Shown: positions 461-11,244 of the stretch, in pieces
How the letters are laid out: every line of letters starts with the position of its first letter
Numbering within the stretch: position 1 is the stretch's first letter
Virus record (IMG/VR): IMGVR_UViG_3300033159_000018
Coordinates: 1 to 12,725 of that record
DNA length: 12,725 nucleotides
Reading direction: 5' to 3' (one strand)
Program-made: the position numbers and the translations under genes
Notes under the pieces: generated by a model
What the model saw: the letters and a program-made list of their open reading frames with translations, nothing else
Told to the model about the DNA's origin: nothing
Databases searched by the model: none

Positions 461-1420
461 ATGAATCAGTATGATACACGAATAGCCCAATTACGTTTCT
501 TCGCATCCTTTTCCGTCGCTTTATATCACCTATGGACTCTTCAATTAATCCCCCTTGTGTTGTTTCGTCCTGGTTGGTTGGGCGTTCCCCTATTTTTCGA
601 GTTATCGATTTTTCTGCTCCTTAACAGGCTCGATGCAAATCCCTCACTCACTCATTACTTCAAAAGGAGGGTGAGGAGGATATGGCCACTTTATTTTCTC
701 GCCGTCGTCGTAGTATTCTTAGCCGACAGATATGTGCTCCACATGGACGTGACATATTACGACTTGATACTCCATTTTACGTTCGTTTCCTTCGTCCTTG
801 TACCGTTTTCCTTCCAATATCTCTTCTGGTCTCTCCAGCTGGAGGAATGGATGTACTTAGCCATCCCCTTCGTCCATCGGATGAGCGATAAAGCAAAATT
901 TCAAACAGCTGTTTTATTGATTTTTACATCGTTTTTCTACAGCCTCTTCATCGTCTTCCTCCCCTACAACGAGTTCCGCTTACTTTACTTCATGCCTCCA
1001 TTCTGGTTAGGGGCATACGGGTGGGGGATAATTGCTTACCTTTTGAAGAAGAAACAGAAAGGTGTATCAGCCAACAAAAAAGCGAAATATTTCATACTAA
1101 TACTTTACGCTCAATATGTTTTTACTGCACTGATATCTTCCTCTAACGAATTTGTATATGAGTTCTTCACAAGGTTCCTGATTTACAACTTGGCGTTACC
1201 CGCTTTCGCCTTCCTTATCATTAACCCACCCAAGGTACTCAGTCGCGTGACGGTCTTCCTTGGAGAGGTAAGTTATGGAGTTTATTTGTGGACTTTACTA
1301 TTTCAGGAACTTTTTGGGATAAGTGGAATACTTTACGGCATACTGACCGCTATCGCAACTGAGTTCCCACTGAGAAAAAGAGAAATAATAAGTAGGTTGA
1401 GTTCCCACTCAGCTCTATAA
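461..1420 (+). CDS. Acyltransferase family 3 (OafA/Oac-like) integral membrane O-acyltransferase
   Basis: Multi-TM protein with family motifs LRxxAxxxVxxYH, GVPLFFxLS, FKRRVRRIWPLY, WSLQLEEWMY and LGEVSYGVYL. Confidence 0.9.
   Translation: MNQYDTRIAQLRFFASFSVALYHLWTLQLIPLVLFRPGWLGVPLFFELSIFLLLNRLDANPSLTHYFKRRVRRIWPLYFLAVVVVFLADRYVLHMDVTYYDLILHFTFVSFVLVPFSFQYLFWSLQLEEWMYLAIPFVHRMSDKAKFQTAVLLIFTSFFYSLFIVFLPYNEFRLLYFMPPFWLGAYGWGIIAYLLKKKQKGVSANKKAKYFILILYAQYVFTALISSSNEFVYEFFTRFLIYNLALPAFAFLIINPPKVLSRVTVFLGEVSYGVYLWTLLFQELFGISGILYGILTAIATEFPLRKREIISRLSSHSAL
903..914. repeat. Palindrome AAACAGCTGTTT, intragenic copy
   Basis: Perfect 12-mer inside the acyltransferase gene. Confidence 0.7.
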
Positions 1421-3656: not shown

Positions 3657-4208
3657 ATGGGACTGATTGGTTCCCTGGCAACTGTATTTTATAAGATCAA
3701 CGAGGGTATAATATATTCGACTTTTCTCGTCGATTTACTTGTAACGTTGATTAATTTCAACGAATACTCAACAAACCCCGCACTCGGAAATTATATATCG
3801 TTATTACTGTCGTTCAACTTGGTGCTGTACCTGGAACATATTCTGGGGAGTATATTTCAGAGCGGTGGCATACTAGTAGGAGGGGCAATAGCAGGGCTTG
3901 CTACTATTTCTGCGTTATTCACAAGGAATTACCTCTTGAACTTGTCACAGCAGGAAATGAGTACTATGCAAATAATCTTTATTTATTTACTGCTTCAGTT
4001 CATTTTCAACAGCTTCGAGAGCATTTTAGTGTATTTCACCGCTATACTCATACCTATGACGTCCAGCATATCGTTGCCGTTCATCGCCCCACCATTACAG
4101 CTGTTTGTCCATGACCTCTCGTTAATTATTGATTTCATAGCATCGTTCGGAGAAGTGATGAGCATAATATACGTCCTTATGGCAACAGGAATGTGGAGCG
4201 AGATGTAA
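3657..4208 (+). CDS. Multi-pass membrane protein (183 aa)
   Basis: About 4-5 hydrophobic segments, with a TTTTTAAT box about 25-30 nt upstream of the ATG. Confidence 0.8.
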   Translation: MGLIGSLATVFYKINEGIIYSTFLVDLLVTLINFNEYSTNPALGNYISLLLSFNLVLYLEHILGSIFQSGGILVGGAIAGLATISALFTRNYLLNLSQQEMSTMQIIFIYLLLQFIFNSFESILVYFTAILIPMTSSISLPFIAPPLQLFVHDLSLIIDFIASFGEVMSIIYVLMATGMWSEM

Positions 4209-4257
4209 AAATAGACATTATAAGTGGTATGGTGCAATATTTAATAGGGGATCCAGA

Positions 4258-4437
4258 ATGGTGGAAACACAAATCGATGAGCAGAAAAAGATCCTGGAGA
4301 GGATGCATAGCAGAGTAGATTATATCATGAACGCTTACAAGGAATACCTAGACGCGTTAGCAGAGTATGACAGAACTGGAGTGTTGAAAATTCACGGAAG
4401 AGTTCTTTATGTAAAAGAACATAAAAACCAAGAGTGA
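4258..4437 (+). CDS. Small protein (59 aa), absent from the ORF track
   Basis: GGGG SD at 4247-4250 and ATG at 4258. Translates as MVETQIDEQKKILERMHSRVDYIMNAYKEYLDALAEYDRTGVLKIHGRVLYVKEHKNQE*. Confidence 0.75.
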   Translation: MVETQIDEQKKILERMHSRVDYIMNAYKEYLDALAEYDRTGVLKIHGRVLYVKEHKNQE

Positions 4438-4463
4438 GAGACTAGTGAAAGTGTTAATACCTC

Positions 4464-4475
4464 AAACAGCAGTTT
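4464..4475. promoter_or_regulatory. Palindromic operator variant AAACAGCAGTTT
   Basis: 11/12 match, preceded by CTC as in other copies, about 66 bp upstream of the TATA of 4561. Confidence 0.6.
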
Positions 4476-4560
4476 TGTGAGCTATAGTTTAATGTAGGCT
4501 GGGCTTGTTTTTCCCTTCCCCCACCATCAGCTTTATTTGCTGTAATTCTAGGAATATAAT

Positions 4561-4896
4561 ATGATTACCCAAAAAGAAATGGTTTCGGCAATTTATAACT
4601 GTGTTAAGAAACATGAAAAACACCTCGTAGACGAGAAGGCTTTTTTGATTTCTCTTTCTGTAGGAATCCCTATAGACGATTTTTACGAAATTGATGATCA
4701 CCTTACTTATCGTGGTCTGATAAACAGTTATATTGCTGACTGCGAAAGTTATTTGTCTACAATAGATAAATACGATGAGAAAACAGTTTTAGAGGCTTCT
4801 CTGCACATGTTTAACTTAATAAGGAGAGGAGTGCGTGGGAAGTTAAACGAGAAAGCCTCAAAATTGCTCTCGGAACTTAATATATTCCATGGATAG
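4561..4896 (+). CDS. Hypothetical protein (111 aa), paralog of 5474-5812
   Basis: Shares NC..H..H, AFLI, C..Y, YDEKT and KLLSEL with the 112-aa protein. Leaderless start after TTTATTTG (4532-4539). Confidence 0.8.
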   Translation: MITQKEMVSAIYNCVKKHEKHLVDEKAFLISLSVGIPIDDFYEIDDHLTYRGLINSYIADCESYLSTIDKYDEKTVLEASLHMFNLIRRGVRGKLNEKASKLLSELNIFHG

Positions 4897-4917
4897 GTTT
4901 TCTGCAAAGTATGTTGT

Positions 4918-4960
4918 AAAAGAAATAGATAAGAACAAACAAAACAGAAAAGAAGAAAAA
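4918..4960 (-). terminator. T-rich terminator between convergent genes
   Basis: A-rich run on the plus strand (T/C-rich on the minus strand) immediately after the stop of 4967-5317. Confidence 0.5.
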
Positions 4961-4966
4961 CTAATT

Positions 4967-5317
4967 TTAGTCTTCTTCTAGCTTATCAATTTTTTTCAAA
5001 CATAATTTGAAGCTTCTGCATACATAGTACATCACTAATCCCGTTGATCCGTTATACTGCTCCAGCAGATACACCTTTTTAGTTTTAGACTGAAGTTGTA
5101 ACACAACTCTATAGACTGAATAATATGTCCTCGGGTAGTATTTTGCTGTATATAGTAGCTCAATATCTGCTTGAATTTCACTGCACTGACCTGTAGACTG
5201 GTTATATTTGTTCTCTACATCGACGTCGATTTTATTATTGCTAAATTTCAGTGAAACGACTTCGTCATCTATATTTAAGAATACTGAGTTCCCGCATAAG
5301 AACCCTATCTGACGCAT
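4967..5317 (-). CDS. Hypothetical protein (116 aa)
   Basis: ORF with its own promoter (CTTAAATA, 5356-5349), a GGG SD-like site and a downstream T-rich terminator. Confidence 0.75.
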   Translation of the reverse strand: MRQIGFLCGNSVFLNIDDEVVSLKFSNNKIDVDVENKYNQSTGQCSEIQADIELLYTAKYYPRTYYSVYRVVLQLQSKTKKVYLLEQYNGSTGLVMYYVCRSFKLCLKKIDKLEED

Positions 5318-5430
5318 TCTGACCCTGCTTATTCTCTTAGCAGATCTGTATTTAAGCTATGCAACAAGTTGAGCAAAACCTTGTGACACAAAGCCGTAGG
5401 TGGTGGGGTGGGTGATGACATAGAATCCTA

Positions 5431-5442
5431 AAACAGCTGTTT
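5431..5442. promoter_or_regulatory. Palindromic operator AAACAGCTGTTT
   Basis: Perfect intergenic copy, upstream of the 5317 gene. Confidence 0.75.
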
Positions 5443-5473
5443 GACAGTGCGAAATAATAAAAAAACACTGACC

Positions 5474-5812
5474 TTAGACCTTAATACCCAGTTCAGATAA
5501 TAGCTTTTTCTCTCTATCGGTAAACTTCACTTCTTTATTAGCGTAATAATACCACAATTTAACGCTCACATCCCTAATAGTTTTTTCGTCGTAAGAAGAG
5601 AAGATCTTAACATATTGGCTACACTCACCTTTTGCGTCCTCTAATTTATCGAAATAAGCAACATAATCAGTATCAGGTGCGAAAAACTCTAAATCGTCCC
5701 CCTTAGCTGAAGCTATTAGAAAAGCCATTGAATTCACTAATTTATGATCGTTAAAATGCTCACTTAAACAGTTTATGTAGGAAGAAATCCTCCATCTATC
5801 GAGTGATAGCAT
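5474..5812 (-). CDS. Hypothetical protein (112 aa), paralog of 4561-4896
   Basis: Ungapped 49-residue alignment from AFLI to YDEKT with the 111-aa protein. Strong BRE/TATA and a GGGG SD. Confidence 0.8.
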   Translation of the reverse strand: MLSLDRWRISSYINCLSEHFNDHKLVNSMAFLIASAKGDDLEFFAPDTDYVAYFDKLEDAKGECSQYVKIFSSYDEKTIRDVSVKLWYYYANKEVKFTDREKKLLSELGIKV

Positions 5813-5819
5813 TTAAGGT

Positions 5820-5870
5820 TCCCCATTACACTCTTCTCGCAGAAGTATATAAACTTTCTGCACAACATGT
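5820..5870 (-). promoter_or_regulatory. Conserved strong promoter/leader cassette
   Basis: ATGTTGTGCAGAAAGTTTATATACTTCTGCGAGAAGAGTGTAATGGGGA, nearly the same as the cassette upstream of 6593. Confidence 0.75.
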
Positions 5871-5909
5871 TATGAAGAAAGAGCGGGCTGGGCGTCGTGC
5901 TAAACAGAA

Positions 5910-5927
5910 CTCAAACAGCTGTTTGAG
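5910..5927. promoter_or_regulatory. Palindromic operator CTCAAACAGCTGTTTGAG
   Basis: 18-bp perfect palindrome centred about 69 bp upstream of the TATA of the 5812 gene. Confidence 0.8.
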
Positions 5928-5957
5928 AGAAAAAAGCATAAAAAAACGGGCTGGCTT

Positions 5958-6104
5958 TTAACCGTACGTTGCTTGCAAATAAGCAAATAGACCCTCGCAT
6001 TCCTCTTCGGAATGCGAGGGCGAATTGAAAAGAAAATAATATGTATCTGGGGAATAGCCCCGTAAATTATAATTGTTTTGCAATAATTCCAAACAGTTCG
6101 TCAT
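5958..6104 (-). CDS. Small protein (48 aa), absent from the ORF track
   Basis: Strong SD GAGGTGA overlaps the upstream gene's TGA. Translates as MTNCLELLQNNYNLRGYSPDTYYFLFNSPSHSEEECEGLFAYLQATYG*. Confidence 0.65.
   Translation of the reverse strand: MTNCLELLQNNYNLRGYSPDTYYFLFNSPSHSEEECEGLFAYLQATYG
5992..6020. repeat. 12-bp perfect GC-rich hairpin
   Basis: CCCTCGCATTCC-TCTTC-GGAATGCGAGGG, inside the 48-aa ORF. Confidence 0.7.
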
Positions 6105-6116
6105 TTGGGGCTCACC

Positions 6117-6593
6117 TCAGTGTTGAACTACCCATTCATCTTCTACTACAATATTTTTAACCCTAATTAAACCCTTATAAGCGGACACGCGGTAGGGTTC
6201 TCCATTCTTGGCTGGAGGGAGTATGACTCCCTCCAGCTTGGATTTCTTCAGTAATTCCTCAGCTTCTTGCCTCGAATTTGTAGTTCCCAAGCTCTCCATA
6301 TAAAATAATAGAACAGATTTGTGTAATTGCAAAAGTTGTACCTGGAACGGCAATGGAATTACACCAACAATACAATCGTACTGTGTAGTAAGTTTCTTCA
6401 GTTCATCTATGTTATTTGGCAGTGTGTCTATTTTATTTATATTAATGCACACTGTTGCTAAATCCTCTTGTTGCATCCTCAAAAGTTCGTGCCTGGTTAC
6501 TAGCAAGCAGTTCTGAAATTTCATAGGTTGGGATTGACCTGAACTTGAAGCTTGACCTGGAGTAGAGGTGTATTGACTTTGAATCTGTGCCAT
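6117..6593 (-). CDS. Hypothetical protein (158 aa), candidate Csx16/Csx20-like ring nuclease fold
   Basis: The gene itself is well supported by its promoter and SD GTGGGG. The motifs LLVTRH and DCIVGVIPL resemble Csx16 (FVSRH...GDxVIGTLP). The functional call is by eye only. Confidence 0.55.
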   Translation of the reverse strand: MAQIQSQYTSTPGQASSSGQSQPMKFQNCLLVTRHELLRMQQEDLATVCININKIDTLPNNIDELKKLTTQYDCIVGVIPLPFQVQLLQLHKSVLLFYMESLGTTNSRQEAEELLKKSKLEGVILPPAKNGEPYRVSAYKGLIRVKNIVVEDEWVVQH

Positions 6594-6599
6594 TTTTTA

Positions 6600-6650
6600 T
6601 CCCCACTATACTCTTCGCAGAATCGGTATATAAAGTTTTCTGCCTAACAT
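6600..6650 (-). promoter_or_regulatory. Conserved strong promoter/leader cassette
   Basis: ATGTTAGGCAGAAAACTTTATATACCGATTCTGCGAAGAGTATAGTGGGGA. Confidence 0.75.
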
Positions 6651-6690
6651 AACTGCACAACCACGAGGGGCGAAAGGGCGAGTAGAAATT

Positions 6691-6708
6691 CTCAGACAGC
6701 TGTTTGAG
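6691..6708. promoter_or_regulatory. Palindromic operator variant CTCAGACAGCTGTTTGAG
   Basis: One mismatch, centred about 69 bp upstream of the TATA of the 6593 gene. Confidence 0.72.
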
Positions 6709-6767
6709 AGAAAAGCGTCCAGCAGTGACAGCTGAACAAGTACGAAAGCCCGACCCTCACGGCAAAA

Positions 6768-6791
6768 TCCCTCAAACAGCTGTTTGAGGGA
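6768..6791. promoter_or_regulatory. Palindromic operator TCCCTCAAACAGCTGTTTGAGGGA
   Basis: 24-bp perfect palindrome. Confidence 0.8.
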
Positions 6792-6856
6792 GAACGTGTT
6801 TAAAAACACGGCTTATCTGAGCCAGAACTTGGGTGAGCCGAAATTATGAATTTAAA

Positions 6857-6881
6857 AAATTCTCCTAAAAGGGATCAAAAA
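6857..6881 (+). repeat. Degenerate inverted copy of the CRISPR-like repeat (anti-repeat), followed on the minus strand by a T6 tract (6859-6854)
   Basis: Plus-strand TCCTAAAAGGGATCAAAAA compares with the repeat TCCGTAAAAGGGATTGAAGG, in the opposite orientation to R1 and R2. Confidence 0.6.
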
Positions 6882-6913
6882 TGGAAGAATATACATTTGC
6901 TTCGTGCTGAATT

Positions 6914-7009
6914 CCTTCAATCCCTTTATGGATGCGATGGTGAAGGGGCATGTCTAAATTTAATTATGATGATACTTCCGTTTCCTTCAATCCCTTTTAC
7001 GGATGCCTC
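6914..7009 (-). CRISPR. Mini-CRISPR-like array (2 repeats, one 45-nt spacer), no cas genes in the window
   Basis: On the minus strand, R1 (7009-6984) is GAGGCATCCGTAAAAGGGATTGAAGG and R2 (6938-6914) is ATCGCATCCATAAAGGGATTGAAGG. Both resemble Sulfolobales 25-nt repeats (ATCCC-AAAA-GGGAT stem and ATTGAAAG 3' handle). The spacer is 6939-6983. Confidence 0.75.
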
Positions 7010-7030
7010 AAAGTTTATACTCAGCCGACT

Positions 7031-7046
7031 TTAATAAGTTTTTCTG
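7031..7046 (-). promoter_or_regulatory. BRE-TATA promoter for the mini-array
   Basis: Minus-strand CAGAAAAACTTATTAA. Normal archaeal spacing puts the TSS at about 7008-7010, the first base of repeat R1. Confidence 0.65.
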
Positions 7047-7113
7047 TACTCCATGGGAAGGCTCAGGATACAAAAAGAATGAGAAGTTGAGAAGTATTCT
7101 CCAAGAAATTCGT

Positions 7114-7695
7114 CTACCTCGGCTTTGCGAAAAAATCCAGGATACTGCTTTGCCTGCCGTGGGACTTACTTACCAGTTGCTGTATTTCTTTCAGTTTCCT
7201 CCTTATGTAATTGACGTCCTTTAACTGCTGAAATCTGCCGAGTAACATCAAAGTAACGTCTCCGTAGTCGAAAGAATAGAATAAGGCTTCTTTCAGCTCG
7301 TGCCTAGTAGAAATGCCAAGATACCAGTGCTGGTATTTAGACGCTTTAATGAAATCATGGATTGTATAGTCTCTGTACTTCGGATCAGACGCGTATCCTG
7401 CAATCACTTTATAGTTATTTTCCCTCAGCTTGTCGGCAATTTCTAGCTGGCTCAGGGTATGAATAGGGACAACGTAAGCTATGTTCTTTGGGACTGGAAG
7501 AACGTAATTAATATTGTCTGGGTATAACGCTACCTCTATCTTGTTTCTGTTAAACCAGAGTTCCCTCAAGTATTTCTTATAATTTCTCTCTATAAGCAAC
7601 GCCTTTTTGTTGTCAAAAAACCTGGGGTATATTATATAGCCAGTGACGTCTTGAAGCTTCTGAATTAGAGGGTTATAGCCTAATGCTAGAATCAT
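7114..7695 (-). CDS. Protein of about 193 aa with a C-terminal PIP box; possible divergent TGT/DpdA-like barrel
   Basis: The true start is likely the ATG at 7695 (SD GGGGG, TATA TTTAAATA at 7735-7728). The C-terminus QSSILDFF matches the PCNA-interaction consensus QxxIxxFF. Confidence 0.65.
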   Translation of the reverse strand: MILALGYNPLIQKLQDVTGYIIYPRFFDNKKALLIERNYKKYLRELWFNRNKIEVALYPDNINYVLPVPKNIAYVVPIHTLSQLEIADKLRENNYKVIAGYASDPKYRDYTIHDFIKASKYQHWYLGISTRHELKEALFYSFDYGDVTLMLLGRFQQLKDVNYIRRKLKEIQQLVSKSHGRQSSILDFFAKPR

Positions 7696-7783
7696 TTTAA
7701 CCCCCATTAGTACCCTGGGCATGAAGTTATTTAAATTTCTAACGAGTTGTGCAGAACTGCGACGGGTGGGTGAGTCGAACAAA

Positions 7784-7805
7784 CCCTCAAACAGCTGTTT
7801 GAGGG
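7784..7805. promoter_or_regulatory. Palindromic operator CCCTCAAACAGCTGTTTGAGGG
   Basis: 22-bp perfect palindrome about 63 bp upstream of the TATA of the 7695 gene. Confidence 0.8.
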
Positions 7806-7899
7806 AAAAATGCCGTTCGACCAACCCCAGCGTGCTGAGCCAGCCTGCACGGGGAAAGGGTATAAAACAAACCGTTCTTTCTCTTCATAAAAAATAAAA

Positions 7900-8196
7900 T
7901 CATACCTTCGCTTCTAGATTGACTATAATGAAGTCCTTGTCGAGTGTCAATATCCAGCCGTAGTCCTTCATTTTCCTCAGGATGTTGTAAGCTTCCAGGG
8001 CGTCGCATTCCATAAAAGCGGAGGCAAGCTTGATCAACCTCTCCCTGTCAATGCTTAGGACTCCGTGTCTGCACTCTGTTATGCTGACAAGGAACCTGTG
8101 AAACTCGACGGCTTTCCTGTACTCGTCTTCAGTCATAGCCGTCGCTAGACCGTCAATATAACTGTTGGTTTTTGAAATTCTTTTCGTACTTTTCAT
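7900..8196 (-). CDS. Probable winged-helix DNA-binding protein (98 aa)
   Basis: The helix-turn-helix and wing pattern RERLIKLASAFMECDALEAYNILRKMKDYGWILTLDKDFIIV. Leaderless start after TTAATAAA. Confidence 0.6.
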   Translation of the reverse strand: MKSTKRISKTNSYIDGLATAMTEDEYRKAVEFHRFLVSITECRHGVLSIDRERLIKLASAFMECDALEAYNILRKMKDYGWILTLDKDFIIVNLEAKV

Positions 8197-8834
8197 AACT
8201 TGAATATAACCACTTATGGTTTATTAACTTTACCGTGTTTCTCTCAATAGACCATGAAGTTATTGAAAAAGTAACAACTCGGTGAAATTAACCCCTATAT
8301 AATATTAAACAAAAAATAAAAGGGAATAAACCCAGGGCTATAGCAAGTGTGCTACAAGGGCTACAAGGCTTACTAGGGGGCTTACTGGGGGCTTTTACAG
8401 TACGCTACACTAGTAGCTCCTTATATTATATTATATTTAGTTTTTAGATAGAGATACTTTACAGTATACTAGACACGTGCAACGACTGCCCTGTTTCTGT
8501 TCACGCCGTCAATTTCTACCCTTACACTAAAAATTTCTCTTCATAAAGTACGTCGTTTTAGGAAAAATTTCTGTTCATCACATTAATAATTGTAATTTAT
8601 TTCTGTTCATGTCTTCCCAGGATTTCCATCCTTATAAAGAAATAAAATGAAAACAGTGCTGGTCTAGACATTAATTTTGTAATAACTCCCAGCTTTACGA
8701 GGAGAAATTGTAAAGAATTTTTGGTAATGCAGAAGAAAGTTTTTGAAATTAAACCTGAGACTTACGTTCTTTGAATTTTTATTACTAAAATGAGAAAAAA
8801 AGTTGATAAAGTTAGGCGTCGGGATTAACGCTTT
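8197..8834. other. Long AT-rich non-coding region with short repeats; candidate replication origin
   Basis: About 640 bp with no ORF. It contains tandem GCTACAAGG x2 (8351-8368), CTTACT(A)GGGGG x2 (8369-8391), and TTTCT(G/C)TTCA x4 at 8494, 8534, 8568 and 8600. Confidence 0.45.
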
Positions 8835-9527: not shown

Positions 9528-9660
9528 TTTTCTTCTCTTCCCCCCACCCTTAAATTATAATAAATTCTTCCTTATATATTATTCTCCCCTTTCTTTCCTT
9601 GCTTTACGCCCGCTTTCTCACCACTGTGAGGCTTCCCGCTCTTGACTCACTTTCCTTCTC

Positions 9661-9672
9661 AAACAGCTGTTT
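9661..9672. promoter_or_regulatory. Palindromic operator AAACAGCTGTTT
   Basis: Lies in the divergent intergenic region, about 68 bp upstream of CTTAAAAG (9731-9738) of the RHH gene. Confidence 0.75.
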
Positions 9673-9772
9673 TAACAAATAGTCCTCTCCTTTCTCGCCA
9701 ACAGTCCCTCCTAACTTGTTAGCCATAAAGCTTAAAAGACTAGTTTGGTAATACATAAACTGGGGGTAAAAA

Positions 9773-10096
9773 ATGAAAATAAAATTGAACCCCGAGATGA
9801 GTGTCGTAACCTTTAAGTTAGAGGAGGATCTACTCCAAAAACTCGATTTATATGCTATGAAGTCAGGGTTAACTAGAAGCGATGTGATTAGAGAAGCACT
9901 GGAATCCTATGATTGGGGGAATAAGAAGAAAATAATGCCAATTCGTATTCGTACGATAACAGTTAAACTGGAGGGGGAGTTATTGCAAAAGCTCGATTTA
10001 TACGCTGTGAATGCAAGGGTAACTAGAAGTCAGGTAATTAGAGAAGCTCTCAAACATTATCTATCCTCATTTGATGGTGAGGGCGGTGAGCAATGA
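9773..10096 (+). CDS. Tandem ribbon-helix-helix transcription factor, aCcr1/CdrS-like
   Basis: Two RHH units: [33 protein letters not shown] and [33 protein letters not shown]. The duplication is also visible at the DNA level. Confidence 0.88.
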
Positions 10097-10771: not shown

Positions 10772-10788
10772 TTTTTAAACAGCTGTTT
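10772..10788 (+). promoter_or_regulatory. TATA box fused to the palindromic operator
   Basis: TTTTTAAACAGCTGTTT upstream of 10813. Confidence 0.75.
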
Positions 10789-10812
10789 GAGAATATAAAA
10801 TGAGGGGCAAAA

Positions 10813-11211: not shown

Positions 11212-11228
11212 TTTATAAACAGCTGTTT
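11212..11228 (+). promoter_or_regulatory. TATA box fused to the palindromic operator
   Basis: TTTATAAACAGCTGTTT upstream of the TFB-like gene. Confidence 0.75.
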
Positions 11229-11244
11229 GTGAATGAGAATCAGT

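What the first reader, a model, noticed from the sequence alone, without database searches (positions are those of the whole stretch)
4258..7805. Modular island of small, separately promoted genes resembling an anti-defence cluster
Seen: a recurring unit of palindrome, GC-rich spacer (GGTGGGTGA or GGGCTGG motifs), BRE/TATA, SD, a 100-200-aa gene and a T-tract. The upstream regions of 5812 and 6593 are nearly identical over about 50 nt although the genes are unrelated. Known: archaeal viral anti-defence genes tend to share conserved strong early promoters. Inference: the unknown ORFs here (59, 111, 116, 112 and 48 aa) are Acr or anti-toxin candidates.
Basis: partly seen in the sequence, partly recalled or inferred. 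Interest (0 to 1): 0.62.

Follow-up and report, generated by a model that had tools for sequence, protein, structure and literature searches.

The report
Accessory gene island of a bicaudavirus
This is the variable small-gene island of a hot-spring archaeal virus related to Sulfolobus monocaudavirus 3: one gene is a close copy of a proven viral antitoxin, and several others use the promoter type already used to predict anti-defence genes in its relatives, so it is largely a new example of something known.

Summary
The repeated unit is real. The palindrome CAAACAGCTGTTTG occurs 10 times in the window (0.05 expected), 9 of them between genes. Five promoters share AAC-NN-GTTAG, a purine-rich BRE, TTTAWATA and a GGGG Shine-Dalgarno.

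The window is an SMV-type bicaudavirus contig from hot-spring metagenomes, syntenic with SMV3 and SMV1.
- The 59-aa ORF is the ortholog (85% identity) of SMV1 gp44, a viral Phd-like antitoxin shown by experiment to neutralise the host Doc toxin.
- The 158+48-aa operon and the 116-aa ORF belong to SMV3 families already predicted as anti-defence genes from this promoter class.
- The 111- and 112-aa ORFs are paralogs of SMV3 gp75, a family not called before. It also occurs in conjugative-plasmid-like contigs and beside a SAMHD1-type dNTPase in two Sulfurisphaera-type chromosomes.
- The 193-aa protein is a TIM-barrel-like enzyme shared with plasmids pARN3/4 and ATV.

The palindrome is not specific to the island. 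It is a cis-element of this virus clade (11-16 sites per SMV genome, none in two host-type genomes) and also lies on promoters of structural genes.

No expression data exist for this element, and no function was tested. Host CRISPR spacers against the island occur in the same samples. Verdict: a new member of a known kind.

The parts
4258..4437 (+). 59-aa viral Phd-like antitoxin, ortholog of SMV1 gp44 (ADG.17 / arCOG10132)
   Evidence: tblastn gives 84.6% identity over 52 aa to SMV1 gp44 and SMV3 gp73, and 61-79% to ATSV and SIRV7-10. In alignment A4 the Asp of the DRTG motif is invariant. phrog_12592, E 5e-33. Function of gp44 is shown in PMC11065993.
4463..4476 (.). Degenerate palindrome (2 mismatches), 91 nt before the 111-aa ATG and 26 nt after the 59-aa stop codon
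   Evidence: The SMV1 homology block ends here.
4561..4896 (+). 111-aa protein of the SMV3 gp75 family, function unknown
   Evidence: 83% identical to SMV3 gp75. 55 homologs at 61-87% identity. AF2 pLDDT 92 with no clear fold neighbour. Contexts are a plasmid operon, or a convergent SAMHD1-type HD dNTPase.
4967..5317 (-). 116-aa protein of the SMV3 gp72/gp71 family (gp71 = predicted ADG.69)
   Evidence: 48% identical to gp72. 21% identical, E 3e-5, to gp71 with a shared PRTYY motif. phrog_28879. Only 5 homologs beyond the window's own record, one of them divergent.
5350..5370 (-). Promoter of the 116-aa gene (AACTTGTTG...CTTAAAT)
5430..5443 (.). Palindrome (1 mismatch), 119 nt before the 116-aa ATG and 31 nt after the 112-aa stop codon and T7 tract
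5474..5812 (-). 112-aa paralog of the 111-aa protein. It carries a host CRISPR protospacer at 5555-5596 with a CCA PAM.
   Evidence: paralogy; spacer flanked by the CRISPR repeat in runs X1/X2.
5839..5871 (-). Promoter of the 112-aa gene: AACATGTTG, GCAGAAAG, TTTATATA, with the inverted repeat GCAGAA/TTCTGC bracketing the TATA box
5912..5925 (.). Perfect palindrome, 106 nt before the 112-aa ATG and 33 nt after the 48-aa stop codon
5958..6104 (-). 48-aa ORF, second gene of the 158-aa operon, homolog of SMV3 gp70 (pADG.12)
   Evidence: 63% identical to gp70. phrog_11751. Listed in the paper's supplement.
6117..6593 (-). 158-aa protein, homolog of SMV3 gp69 (predicted ADG.68)
   Evidence: 51% identical to gp69. 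phrog_31280. Atlas structure neighbours include MJ1673/TIGR02221 CRISPR-associated clusters at TM 0.5-0.6 (a lead only).
6617..6643 (-). Promoter of the 158+48-aa operon, with the same GCAGAA/TTCTGC inverted repeat around TTTATATA
6693..6706 (.). Palindrome (1 mismatch), 106 nt before the 158-aa ATG
6773..6786 (.). Second, perfect palindrome (23-nt TCCCTCAAACAGCTGTTTGAGGG), 26 nt identical to the SMV1 site beside gp44
6800..7113 (.). Stretch with no homolog in relatives. It holds a possible 62-aa ORF (6846-7034, +) and a 70-nt tandem duplication (6912/6982).
   Evidence: Contigs of run X3 carry one copy of the 70-nt unit.
7114..7695 (-). 193-aa TIM-barrel-like enzyme, homolog of SMV3 gp68, pARN3/4 ORFs, ATV ORF192 and STK_13380
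   Evidence: Invariant D28, D60, H79, S103, R108, S129, T130, E133, E136 and D146. AF2 pLDDT 89. VIA Z about 11 to many TIM barrels. The cassette is missing in population variants.
7729..7748 (-). Promoter of the 193-aa gene (AACTCGTTAGAAATTTAAAT)
7788..7801 (.). Perfect palindrome, 99 nt before the 193-aa ATG
7900..8196 (-). 98-aa protein outside the finding (SMV1 gp43 / SMV3 gp67). No palindrome upstream. It carries a second CRISPR protospacer at 8013-8049 with a CCA PAM.
9660..10096 (+). The same unit outside the finding: palindrome at 9660, promoter at 9713-9737, and a gene for a tandem double ribbon-helix-helix protein of the aCcr1 type (9773-10096)
   Evidence: (D4). aCcr1 homolog SMV3 gp63 is described in PMC9976878.
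10776..11229 (.). Two promoter-proximal palindromes (10776-10789 and 11216-11229), lying on the core promoters of the 104-aa gene and the 299-aa gene (SMV1 gp39 homolog)

Best explanation
Positions 4258-7805 are the variable accessory ('anti-defence / host-takeover') island of an SMV-type bicaudavirus. The island lies next to the replication module (acyltransferase, DnaA-like ATPase, gp46, membrane protein).

It holds six transcription units: 59 aa; 111 aa; 116 aa; 112 aa; 158+48 aa; and 193 aa.

Shown by homology:
- The first unit encodes an ortholog of the viral Phd-like antitoxin SMV1 gp44, which binds and neutralises the host Doc (Fic-type) toxin.
- The 158+48-aa and 116-aa units belong to families already predicted as anti-defence genes in SMV3.

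Shown in the sequence:
- Four island units (116, 112, 158+48 and 193 aa) use one promoter class: AAC-NN-GTTAG, GCAGAAA-type BRE, TTTAWATA and a GGGG Shine-Dalgarno, although the 116-aa promoter has a poor BRE and a GGG Shine-Dalgarno. The aCcr1-like tandem-RHH gene outside the island uses it too. This class is conserved in SMV3, SMV4 and related contigs.
- In each of these units the palindrome CAAACAGCTGTTTG lies 60-85 bp upstream of the TATA box. The 111-aa unit also has a (degenerate) palindrome at that distance, but a weaker promoter.

Inferred:
- The palindrome is the operator of a virus-encoded dimeric DNA-binding protein. It occurs 10-16 times per genome in this virus clade and not in host-type genomes.
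- Where it lies over a core promoter (structural and replication genes in SMV1; the 104- and 299-aa genes here), binding should repress. In the island it lies upstream of the promoter, where it may activate, insulate, or cooperate with the proximal AAC-NN-GTT half-site and the GCAGAA/TTCTGC repeat.
- Because it is the only near-identical sequence at the unit boundaries, it probably also serves as a crossover point when co-infecting relatives swap cassettes.
- The 111/112-aa, 116-aa, 158-aa and 48-aa proteins are most likely small binders of host proteins. Their targets are unknown.
- The 193-aa protein is an enzyme.
For: Identity of the element:
- 75-79% nucleotide identity and synteny with SMV3, SMV4 and SMV1.
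- Found only in hot-spring metagenomes.

Antitoxin:
-, plus the experiments reported in PMC11065993.

Promoter class and its overlap with published anti-defence gene calls:
-.

Palindrome:
- 10 sites against 0.05 expected, 9 of 10 intergenic.
- 11 sites in SMV3 and 13 in SMV1, with 0 for the reversed control pattern. 16 sites in SMV4 and 0 in two 2.8-Mb Sulfurisphaera-type genomes.
- The exact 18-mer occurs in only 8 of 2.9 million IMG/VR contigs: SMV1, SMV3 and SMV4, plus five metagenome contigs of which at least three carry homologs of window genes.
- It lies 20-40 nt before the start codons of SMV1 gp03, gp05, gp09, gp10, gp16 and gp24/25.
- Its distance to the TATA box in the island is regular.

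Cassette variability:
- Gene order differs from SMV3.
- The 193-aa cassette is absent in L010 and in a contig of run X3.
- Seven of 56 homology-block ends lie within 30 nt of a palindrome, against about 2.7 expected.

Arms-race context:
- Two host CRISPR spacers with CCN PAMs match the island and its flank, in the same samples.
- SMV4 carries AcrIII-1 in the corresponding slot.
Against: - There are no expression data for this element. In the SMV1a time course, virion genes whose promoters carry the palindrome are early or constitutive, so the palindrome cannot simply mark 'early anti-defence' genes.
- No binding protein was identified. The aCcr1 box differs from the palindrome, and no DNA-binding domain was found in the 299-aa, 98-aa or 104-aa proteins.
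- Perfect palindromes also occur inside ORFs: SMV1 gp09, gp34 and gp48, and window 902.
- None of the unknown ORFs matches a known Acr, antitoxin or defence protein.
- The 111-aa family is conserved at 61-87% identity and sits in a plasmid conjugation-region operon.
- The enrichment of homology-block ends at palindromes is weak, and the blocks are not independent of one another.
Confidence: 0.7

Rival explanations
1. The palindrome is a termination or insulation element rather than an operator. It would form a hairpin or bind a roadblock just downstream of each gene, so that tightly packed units are not read through.
For: In tandem units it lies 26-33 nt after the stop codon of the preceding gene, and after a T7 tract at two of the three sites (5430, 5912); at 4463 no T-tract precedes it. 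In SMV1 a perfect copy lies between the convergent genes gp43 and gp44.
Against: - It follows the T-tract rather than preceding it.
- The convergent pair 4896/4967 has none.
- It is present upstream of genes that have no gene before them on that strand (9773, 10813, 11233).
- In SMV1 it lies 20-40 nt before start codons, on core promoters.
- Its distance to the downstream TATA box is regular, whereas its distance to the upstream stop codon is set only by the short 3' ends.
Confidence: 0.12
2. The island is a set of general mobile-element accessory genes (regulation, DNA metabolism, cell-cycle control) shared among Sulfolobales viruses and conjugative plasmids. Apart from the antitoxin, it has no anti-defence role.
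For: - The 111-aa family lies in a conserved operon beside TraG in plasmid-like contigs and is 61-87% conserved.
- The 193-aa protein is a TIM-barrel-like enzyme with invariant acidic and His residues, shared with pARN3/4, ATV and cellular genomes.
- The same promoter class drives an aCcr1-type cell-cycle regulator.
Against: - One member is a validated antitoxin.
- A relative has AcrIII-1 in the same slot.
- The 116- and 158-aa families are narrow and diverge fast (48-51% identity to SMV3 where flanking genes are 76-94% identical).
- The promoter class is the published predictor of anti-defence genes.
Confidence: 0.3
3. The palindrome (core CAGCTG) is a target or protection site of a DNA-modification or restriction function, or a packaging or architectural site, and is unrelated to transcription.
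For: Perfect copies lie inside long ORFs (SMV1 gp09 twice, gp34). The window's first ORF is a methyltransferase fragment. Sites are spread around the whole genome.
Against: There is strong intergenic bias (9 of 10 here, P 3e-5). The position relative to TATA boxes and start codons is fixed. The conserved arms extend well beyond CAGCTG, to 18-23 nt.
Confidence: 0.08

Closest known systems
Predicted anti-defence gene (ADG) clusters of SMV3/SMV4, defined by a shared regulatory sequence (Bhoobalan-Chitty et al., Nat Commun 2024, PMC11065993)
   Same: Same virus clade, with a syntenic region (SMV3 gp67-gp75). Same promoter consensus: AAC-NN-GTTAG, GCAGAAA, TTTAWATA. Orthologs or paralogs of ADG.68, ADG.69, pADG.12, ADG.70 and pADG.01.
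   Different: Gene order and content differ. The window has a second gp75-type paralog under a full ADG-type promoter; that family is not in the published list. It also has a duplicated RHH. The distal palindrome lies at or beyond the edge of the 100-bp region analysed in the paper, and I found no mention of it in the text available to me.
SMV1 gp44 / ADG.17 (arCOG10132), a viral Phd-like antitoxin against host Doc
   Same: 85% identity, the same length of conserved core, the same conserved Asp, the same position after the membrane-protein gene, and the same virus distribution.
   Different: Not tested here. Its promoter lacks the shared regulatory sequence, as the paper also notes for some homologs.
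SIRV2 terminal early-gene / Acr clusters with Aca8-controlled promoters, and bacterial phage acr-aca operons
   Same: Small single genes, each with a near-identical strong promoter carrying an operator. Gene sequences diverge while regulatory DNA is conserved.
   Different: A different virus family, a different motif and no Aca8 (wHTH) homolog. Here there is a two-part arrangement: a distal palindrome plus proximal elements. The palindrome is also used at structural-gene promoters.
Viral aCcr1 homologs (SMV3 gp63, ATV gp29), RHH repressors of host cdvA
   Same: The neighbouring gene 9773-10096 is homologous and uses the same promoter class.
   Different: Here two RHH units are fused in one chain. 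The known aCcr1 box is unlike the palindrome.
Virus-borne mini-CRISPR arrays (SPV1/2, ATV)
   Same: Two direct repeats 70 nt apart in an intergenic stretch of a bicaudavirus.
   Different: The repeat matches no CRISPR repeat in 121 Sulfolobales genomes and differs from the local host repeat. Population variants have one copy, so it is a tandem duplication.

Membership tests
ADG.17 / arCOG10132 viral Phd-like antitoxin (SMV1 gp44) | Sequence homology to SMV1 gp44 across the conserved core | tested here: met
   84.6% identity over 52 of 59 residues. 36 invariant columns among the window, SMV1, SMV3 and SIRV10.
ADG.17 / arCOG10132 viral Phd-like antitoxin (SMV1 gp44) | Conserved Asp (D39 in the paper) proposed to contact Doc K81/R82 | tested here: met
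   The Asp of the E-[YF]-D-R-T-G motif (D38 here) is invariant in alignment A4. Its equivalence to the paper's D39 is inferred from the motif, not from the paper's own alignment.
ADG.17 / arCOG10132 viral Phd-like antitoxin (SMV1 gp44) | Binds Doc and rescues its toxicity | not testable with these tools
   Shown for SMV1 gp44 only.
ADG regulon as defined by Bhoobalan-Chitty et al. 2024 | A single gene with a predicted strong promoter (purine-rich BRE plus TTTAWATA) | tested here: met
   Promoters of the units at 5812, 6593, 7695 and 9773. Weaker for 5317. Not met for 4258 and 4561.
ADG regulon as defined by Bhoobalan-Chitty et al. 2024 | Regulatory sequence around the promoter shared by several genes of the same genome | tested here: met
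   Pairwise local scores of 33-58 against a shuffled maximum of 25. The same consensus occurs in SMV3 ADG promoters.
ADG regulon as defined by Bhoobalan-Chitty et al. 2024 | Transcription immediately after infection | not testable with these tools
   No RNA run holds the element. The SMV1a time course exists, but per-gene classes for gp43-gp46 are only in a figure.
Known archaeal anti-CRISPRs (AcrID1, AcrIIIB1, AcrIIIB2, AcrIII-1/DUF1874, AcrIA) | Detectable sequence similarity to a characterised Acr | tested here: not met
   No Pfam, PHROG-annotated, NCBIfam, PADLOC or PDB match for any island ORF. The AcrVIA1 hit has E 2.6, which is noise.
Type II antitoxin-like partner of a toxin (for the 111/112-aa family) | Conserved adjacency to a toxin or effector gene in cells | tested here: inconclusive
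   A convergent, 3'-overlapping SAMHD1/EF1143-type HD dNTPase in Sulfolobus sp. S-194. The same locus is frameshifted in S. ohwakuensis, with remnants in a MAG and in SMV3. No HD gene beside the more distant members P0083 and P0090, or in plasmid contexts.
Type II antitoxin-like partner of a toxin (for the 111/112-aa family) | Antitoxin-like fold | tested here: inconclusive
   The best structural match is the DarTG complex chain 7yk3_D: Z 6.1, rmsd 4.1 over 102 residues, with the next match at Z 4.3. This is below the level the tool calls reliable. Foldseek against PDB and Atlas gave nothing.
TIM-barrel (beta/alpha) enzymes (for the 193-aa protein) | Alternating beta-alpha units closing a barrel, with catalytic residues at the C-terminal strand ends | tested here: met
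   AF2 pLDDT 89 with 7-8 beta-alpha units. VIA Z 9.4-11.0 over 150-176 residues to about 50 different TIM barrels. Invariant Asp, Glu and His residues. No specific family stands out.
Virus-borne mini-CRISPR array | Repeats that match a host CRISPR repeat family | tested here: not met
   The 25-mer with up to 3 mismatches was found in none of the 121 Sulfolobales genomes searched. The host repeat seen in the same samples is a different sequence.

The most novel reading that the evidence does not exclude
The palindrome CAAACAGCTGTTTG defines an undescribed, virus-encoded global regulon of SMV-type bicaudaviruses. One factor would act from two geometries: on the core promoter of structural and replication genes, and about 65 bp upstream of a dedicated anti-defence promoter class. 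The palindrome would double as the crossover site that shuffles anti-defence cassettes. Within this regulon, the gp75-type 111/112-aa family would be a new anti-defence family, possibly aimed at a SAMHD1-like dNTPase, and the 158-aa family a CARF-like decoy for type III CRISPR signals.
Probability: 0.15. Interest if true: 0.65.

Novelty: new member of a known kind. Interest (0 to 1): 0.35.

Why it matters
The window adds a natural variant to the small set of bicaudavirus anti-defence islands.

- It confirms from an independent genome that the published promoter class marks a coherent set of cassettes.
- It extends that class to a family not previously called (gp75 type).
- It points to a conserved distal operator that could be used both to find the regulator and to mine further cassettes in metagenomes.
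- Matching host CRISPR spacers in the same springs show the element is under active immune pressure.

None of this changes current understanding. The main value is as a set of concrete candidates for Saccharolobus assays.

Tried and rejected
- **Complex prediction.** I submitted the 111-aa protein with the neighbouring HD dNTPase of Sulfolobus sp. S-194. The job returned no answer (score 0.00, controls not run). It is evidence neither for nor against binding.
- **Mini-CRISPR reading of the 6912/6982 repeats.** Rejected.
- **Palindrome as a host transcription-factor site.** There are 0 sites in two 2.8-Mb host-type genomes. The natural host was not identified, so this is indicative only.
- **Palindrome as the aCcr1 box.** The published box differs.
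- **RNA genes.** Rfam and tRNA scans of the window found nothing above noise.
- **Family and structure searches.** Pfam, NCBIfam, PADLOC and PDB sequence searches of all island ORFs gave only sub-threshold hits. These were OspC3 for the 193-aa protein (E 0.007-0.04), an LRR protein for the 158-aa protein (E 2.5e-6 over 58 residues), Csm2 and AcrVIA1. I did not build on them.
- **111-aa family in other collections.** The genome-collection scan found one MAG only. The plasmid collection gave no match. The protein-atlas feature search gave no usable hit.
- **Literature search for the palindrome string.** No paper found.
- **Gene timing in SMV1a.** The classes for gp43-gp46 are not stated in the text, and the supplement is not held.
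- **Pfam PF27247 (MJ1673).** It is not in the local library, so the CARF-like lead for the 158-aa protein could not be checked by sequence.
- **Other points.** No alternative genetic code was used.

Full report
**What the window is.** The 12.7-kb window is the whole record held for this 'genome'. It occurs only in hot-spring metagenomes. Two runs hold 85-89% of the island's sampled words, and no RNA run holds it. DNA and protein comparisons place it among SMV-type bicaudaviruses. Identity is 75-79% with SMV3, SMV4 and SMV1 over the conserved parts, and the gene order is syntenic:
- acyltransferase (461-1420), DnaA-like ATPase (1428-2351), gp46 homolog (2335-2847) and membrane protein (3657-4208);
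- then the island;
- then the homologs of SMV3 gp67, gp66, gp63, gp62 and gp61.

**The observation.** The palindrome CAAACAGCTGTTTG occurs 10 times with up to 2 mismatches, against 0.05 expected. Nine of the ten sites are in the 25% of the window that is non-coding. Aligning the regions upstream of 4561, 5317, 5812, 6593, 7695 and 9773 gives a common plan:
- the palindrome;
- a spacer of 37-59 nt that is richer in G+C than the window (0.42-0.57 against 0.39);
- AAC-NN-GTTAG;
- a purine-rich BRE (GCAGAAA in the best copies);
- TTTAWATA;
- TAATGGGG;
- ATG.

From palindrome centre to TATA centre is 62-69 bp in four units and 85 bp in one. From TATA to ATG is 38-41 nt. T-tracts follow most stop codons.

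The 5812 and 6593 upstream regions are the best pair in the window (score 58, shuffled maximum 25). They are alike over about 115 nt, but the promoter core is about 80% identical rather than nearly identical. Only these two carry the inverted repeat GCAGAA/TTCTGC bracketing the TATA box.

Exceptions to the plan:
- The 59-aa gene has only a TATA-like box.
- The 111-aa gene has a degenerate palindrome and a short or absent leader.
- The 48-aa ORF is the second gene of the 158-aa operon.
- The last ORF most likely starts at 7695 (193 aa).

**The genes.**
- **59 aa (4258-4437).** It is 85% identical to SMV1 gp44 and SMV3 gp73, and 61-79% to ORFs of ATSV and SIRV7-10. This is exactly the distribution given for family ADG.17/arCOG10132 in Bhoobalan-Chitty et al. 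2024. That paper shows SMV1 gp44 rescues S. islandicus from the Doc toxin SiL_0731 and co-purifies with it. The Asp of the DRTG motif is invariant. This ORF is therefore a viral Phd-like antitoxin by orthology.
- **158 aa and 48 aa.** They correspond to SMV3 gp69 (ADG.68) and gp70 (pADG.12).
- **116 aa.** It matches SMV3 gp72 (48% identity) and, weakly, its tandem paralog gp71 (ADG.69).
- **111 aa and 112 aa.** They are paralogs of SMV3 gp75, which is not in the published list.
- **193 aa.** It matches SMV3 gp68, ORFs of plasmids pARN3/4, ATV ORF192 and cellular genes. The confident model (pLDDT 89) is a compact TIM-barrel-like fold (Z about 11 to many barrels) with invariant Asp, Glu and His residues. 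It looks like an enzyme of unknown reaction.

**The 111/112-aa family in more detail.** It has 55 close homologs at 61-87% identity and a few distant ones. It occurs in three contexts:
- in conjugative-plasmid-like contigs, as the last gene of an operon that converges on traG;
- in a small-gene viral contig;
- in Sulfolobus sp. S-194 and Sulfurisphaera ohwakuensis, convergent with and overlapping the 3' end of an HD protein. That protein is a SAMHD1/EF1143-type dNTP triphosphohydrolase (E 1e-38 to 2o6i).

The two chromosomal loci are one locus by descent (HD genes 89% identical, one frameshifted). A MAG and SMV3 keep short remnants of the HD gene. More distant family members have no HD neighbour.

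The fold is confidently predicted (pLDDT 92) but has no clear neighbour. The best match is a chain of the DarTG toxin-antitoxin complex at Z 6.1, below the reliable range. A role as partner or inhibitor of the dNTPase is therefore only a lead.

For the 158-aa protein, the Atlas's own model resembles clusters from archaeal viruses and, at TM 0.5-0.6, MJ1673/TIGR02221 CRISPR-associated proteins. This too is only a lead.

**The cis-elements in relatives.** The proximal promoter class is conserved.
- In SMV3 it precedes gp62, gp63, gp68, gp69, gp71 and gp72. Several of these are the published predicted anti-defence genes.
- It also occurs in SMV4 and in contig L010.
- In SMV1 it precedes the RHH nORF.

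The palindrome is a different matter.
- It occurs 11 times in SMV3, 13 in SMV1 and 16 in SMV4 with up to 1 mismatch. It occurs 0 times in two 2.8-Mb Sulfurisphaera-type genomes, and 0 times for the reversed control pattern.
- The exact 18-mer is present in only 8 IMG/VR contigs: SMV1, SMV3 and SMV4, plus five metagenome contigs of which at least three carry homologs of window genes.
- In SMV1 it lies 20-40 nt before the start codons of gp03 (major capsid protein), gp05, gp09, gp10, gp16 and gp24/25, that is, on the core promoters. Perfect copies also lie inside gp09 and gp34.
- In the window the same proximal position is seen at 10776 and 11216. The gp39-type 299-aa gene has it on its promoter in the window, SMV1 and SMV3.
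- In the SMV1a time course, gp05, gp06 and gp09 are early and gp03 is expressed throughout.

The palindrome is thus a clade-specific, genome-wide element and not a mark of the island.

**How it probably works.**
- Shown: the anatomy above, the orthology of the antitoxin, and the conservation of both cis-elements.
- Inferred: a virus-encoded dimeric DNA-binding protein recognises the palindrome. On core promoters it should repress. In the island, where the site is about 65 bp upstream of the TATA box, it may activate, insulate neighbouring units, or cooperate with the proximal AAC-NN-GTT half-palindrome and the TATA-bracketing repeat.
- The binding protein is unknown. The published aCcr1 box differs from the palindrome, and no DNA-binding domain was detected in the other candidates.
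- The island's gene content varies among relatives and within the source population. The 193-aa cassette is missing in L010 and in a contig of run X3, and a 70-nt duplication is polymorphic.
- Homology blocks tend to end at palindromes (7 of 56 ends against about 2.7 expected). This fits recombination at these identical sites but is weak evidence.

**Context that supports an arms race.**
- In the two runs that hold the element, contigs show window 5555-5596 and 8013-8049 flanked on both sides by the CRISPR repeat GATAATCCTTGATGGAATTGAAAG. Both protospacers are preceded by CCA.
- In SMV4 the slot between two palindromes next to the antitoxin gene holds a DUF1874 AcrIII-1 gene.

**Verdict.** Nothing shows that any of them is an Acr. 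The island is a new member of a known kind. The distal palindrome and the gp75-type family are the only parts I could not find described in the literature available to me.

Noticed in passing
window 5555-5596 and 8013-8049: In runs X1 and X2, the same samples that hold the element, contigs show these two stretches flanked on both sides by the CRISPR repeat GATAATCCTTGATGGAATTGAAAG. Both are preceded by CCA in the window, which is a CCN PAM. Hosts in these springs therefore carry spacers against the 112-aa and 98-aa genes.
   Followed up: partly
window 8197-8834: A stretch of about 640 nt with no ORF is conserved at the DNA level: 74% over 615 nt with the SMV3 gp66-gp67 spacer, and in parts with the SMV1 gp42-gp43 gap and with L010. 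It carries three copies of TTTCTGTTCA. It may be a replication origin or a non-coding RNA.
   Followed up: partly
window 9773-10096: This gene encodes two aCcr1-type ribbon-helix-helix units fused in one 107-aa chain (a 94-nt internal repeat, 77% identical). Relatives have a single unit, and SMV3 gp63 was shown to arrest host cell division.
   Followed up: partly
window 6912-6997: A tandem duplication of 70 nt (an exact 16-mer, TTCCTTCAATCCCTTT, twice). Contigs of run X3 carry one copy. It looked CRISPR-like but matches no Sulfolobales repeat.
   Followed up: yes
window 6800-7906: A contig in run X3 joins 6800 to 7906, and contig L010 has the same architecture. Natural variants therefore lack the whole 193-aa cassette.
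   Followed up: partly
window 4244-4404: Contig depth over the antitoxin gene is far higher than over its flanks in X1-X3 (about 50- to 330-fold), and the contigs there have different flanking sequence. The gene also sits in another, much more abundant element of the same springs.
   Followed up: no
window 902-915 and SMV1 47057: A palindrome copy lies inside the acyltransferase gene at nearly the same codon position in the window and in SMV1 (about 441-444 nt from the start). It may be kept by coding constraint or be a functional internal site.
   Followed up: no
L004 8874-8940 (SMV3 gp72): The annotated TTG start of SMV3 gp72 lies directly after a palindrome, and an ADG-type promoter lies inside the annotated ORF. 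The true start is probably downstream, as in the window's 116-aa ORF.
   Followed up: no
window 6773-7034, + strand: A possible extra unit: palindrome at 6773, TTTAAAAA at 6799, GGTGAG, and ATG at 6846 (62 aa). It has no homolog in any relative fetched.
   Followed up: no
L004 10561-10611 (SMV3, downstream of gp75): A 17-aa remnant, 88% identical to the C-terminus of the Sulfolobus sp. S-194 HD dNTPase, follows gp75. This suggests the small gene moved between cell and virus together with the end of its convergent neighbour.
   Followed up: partly
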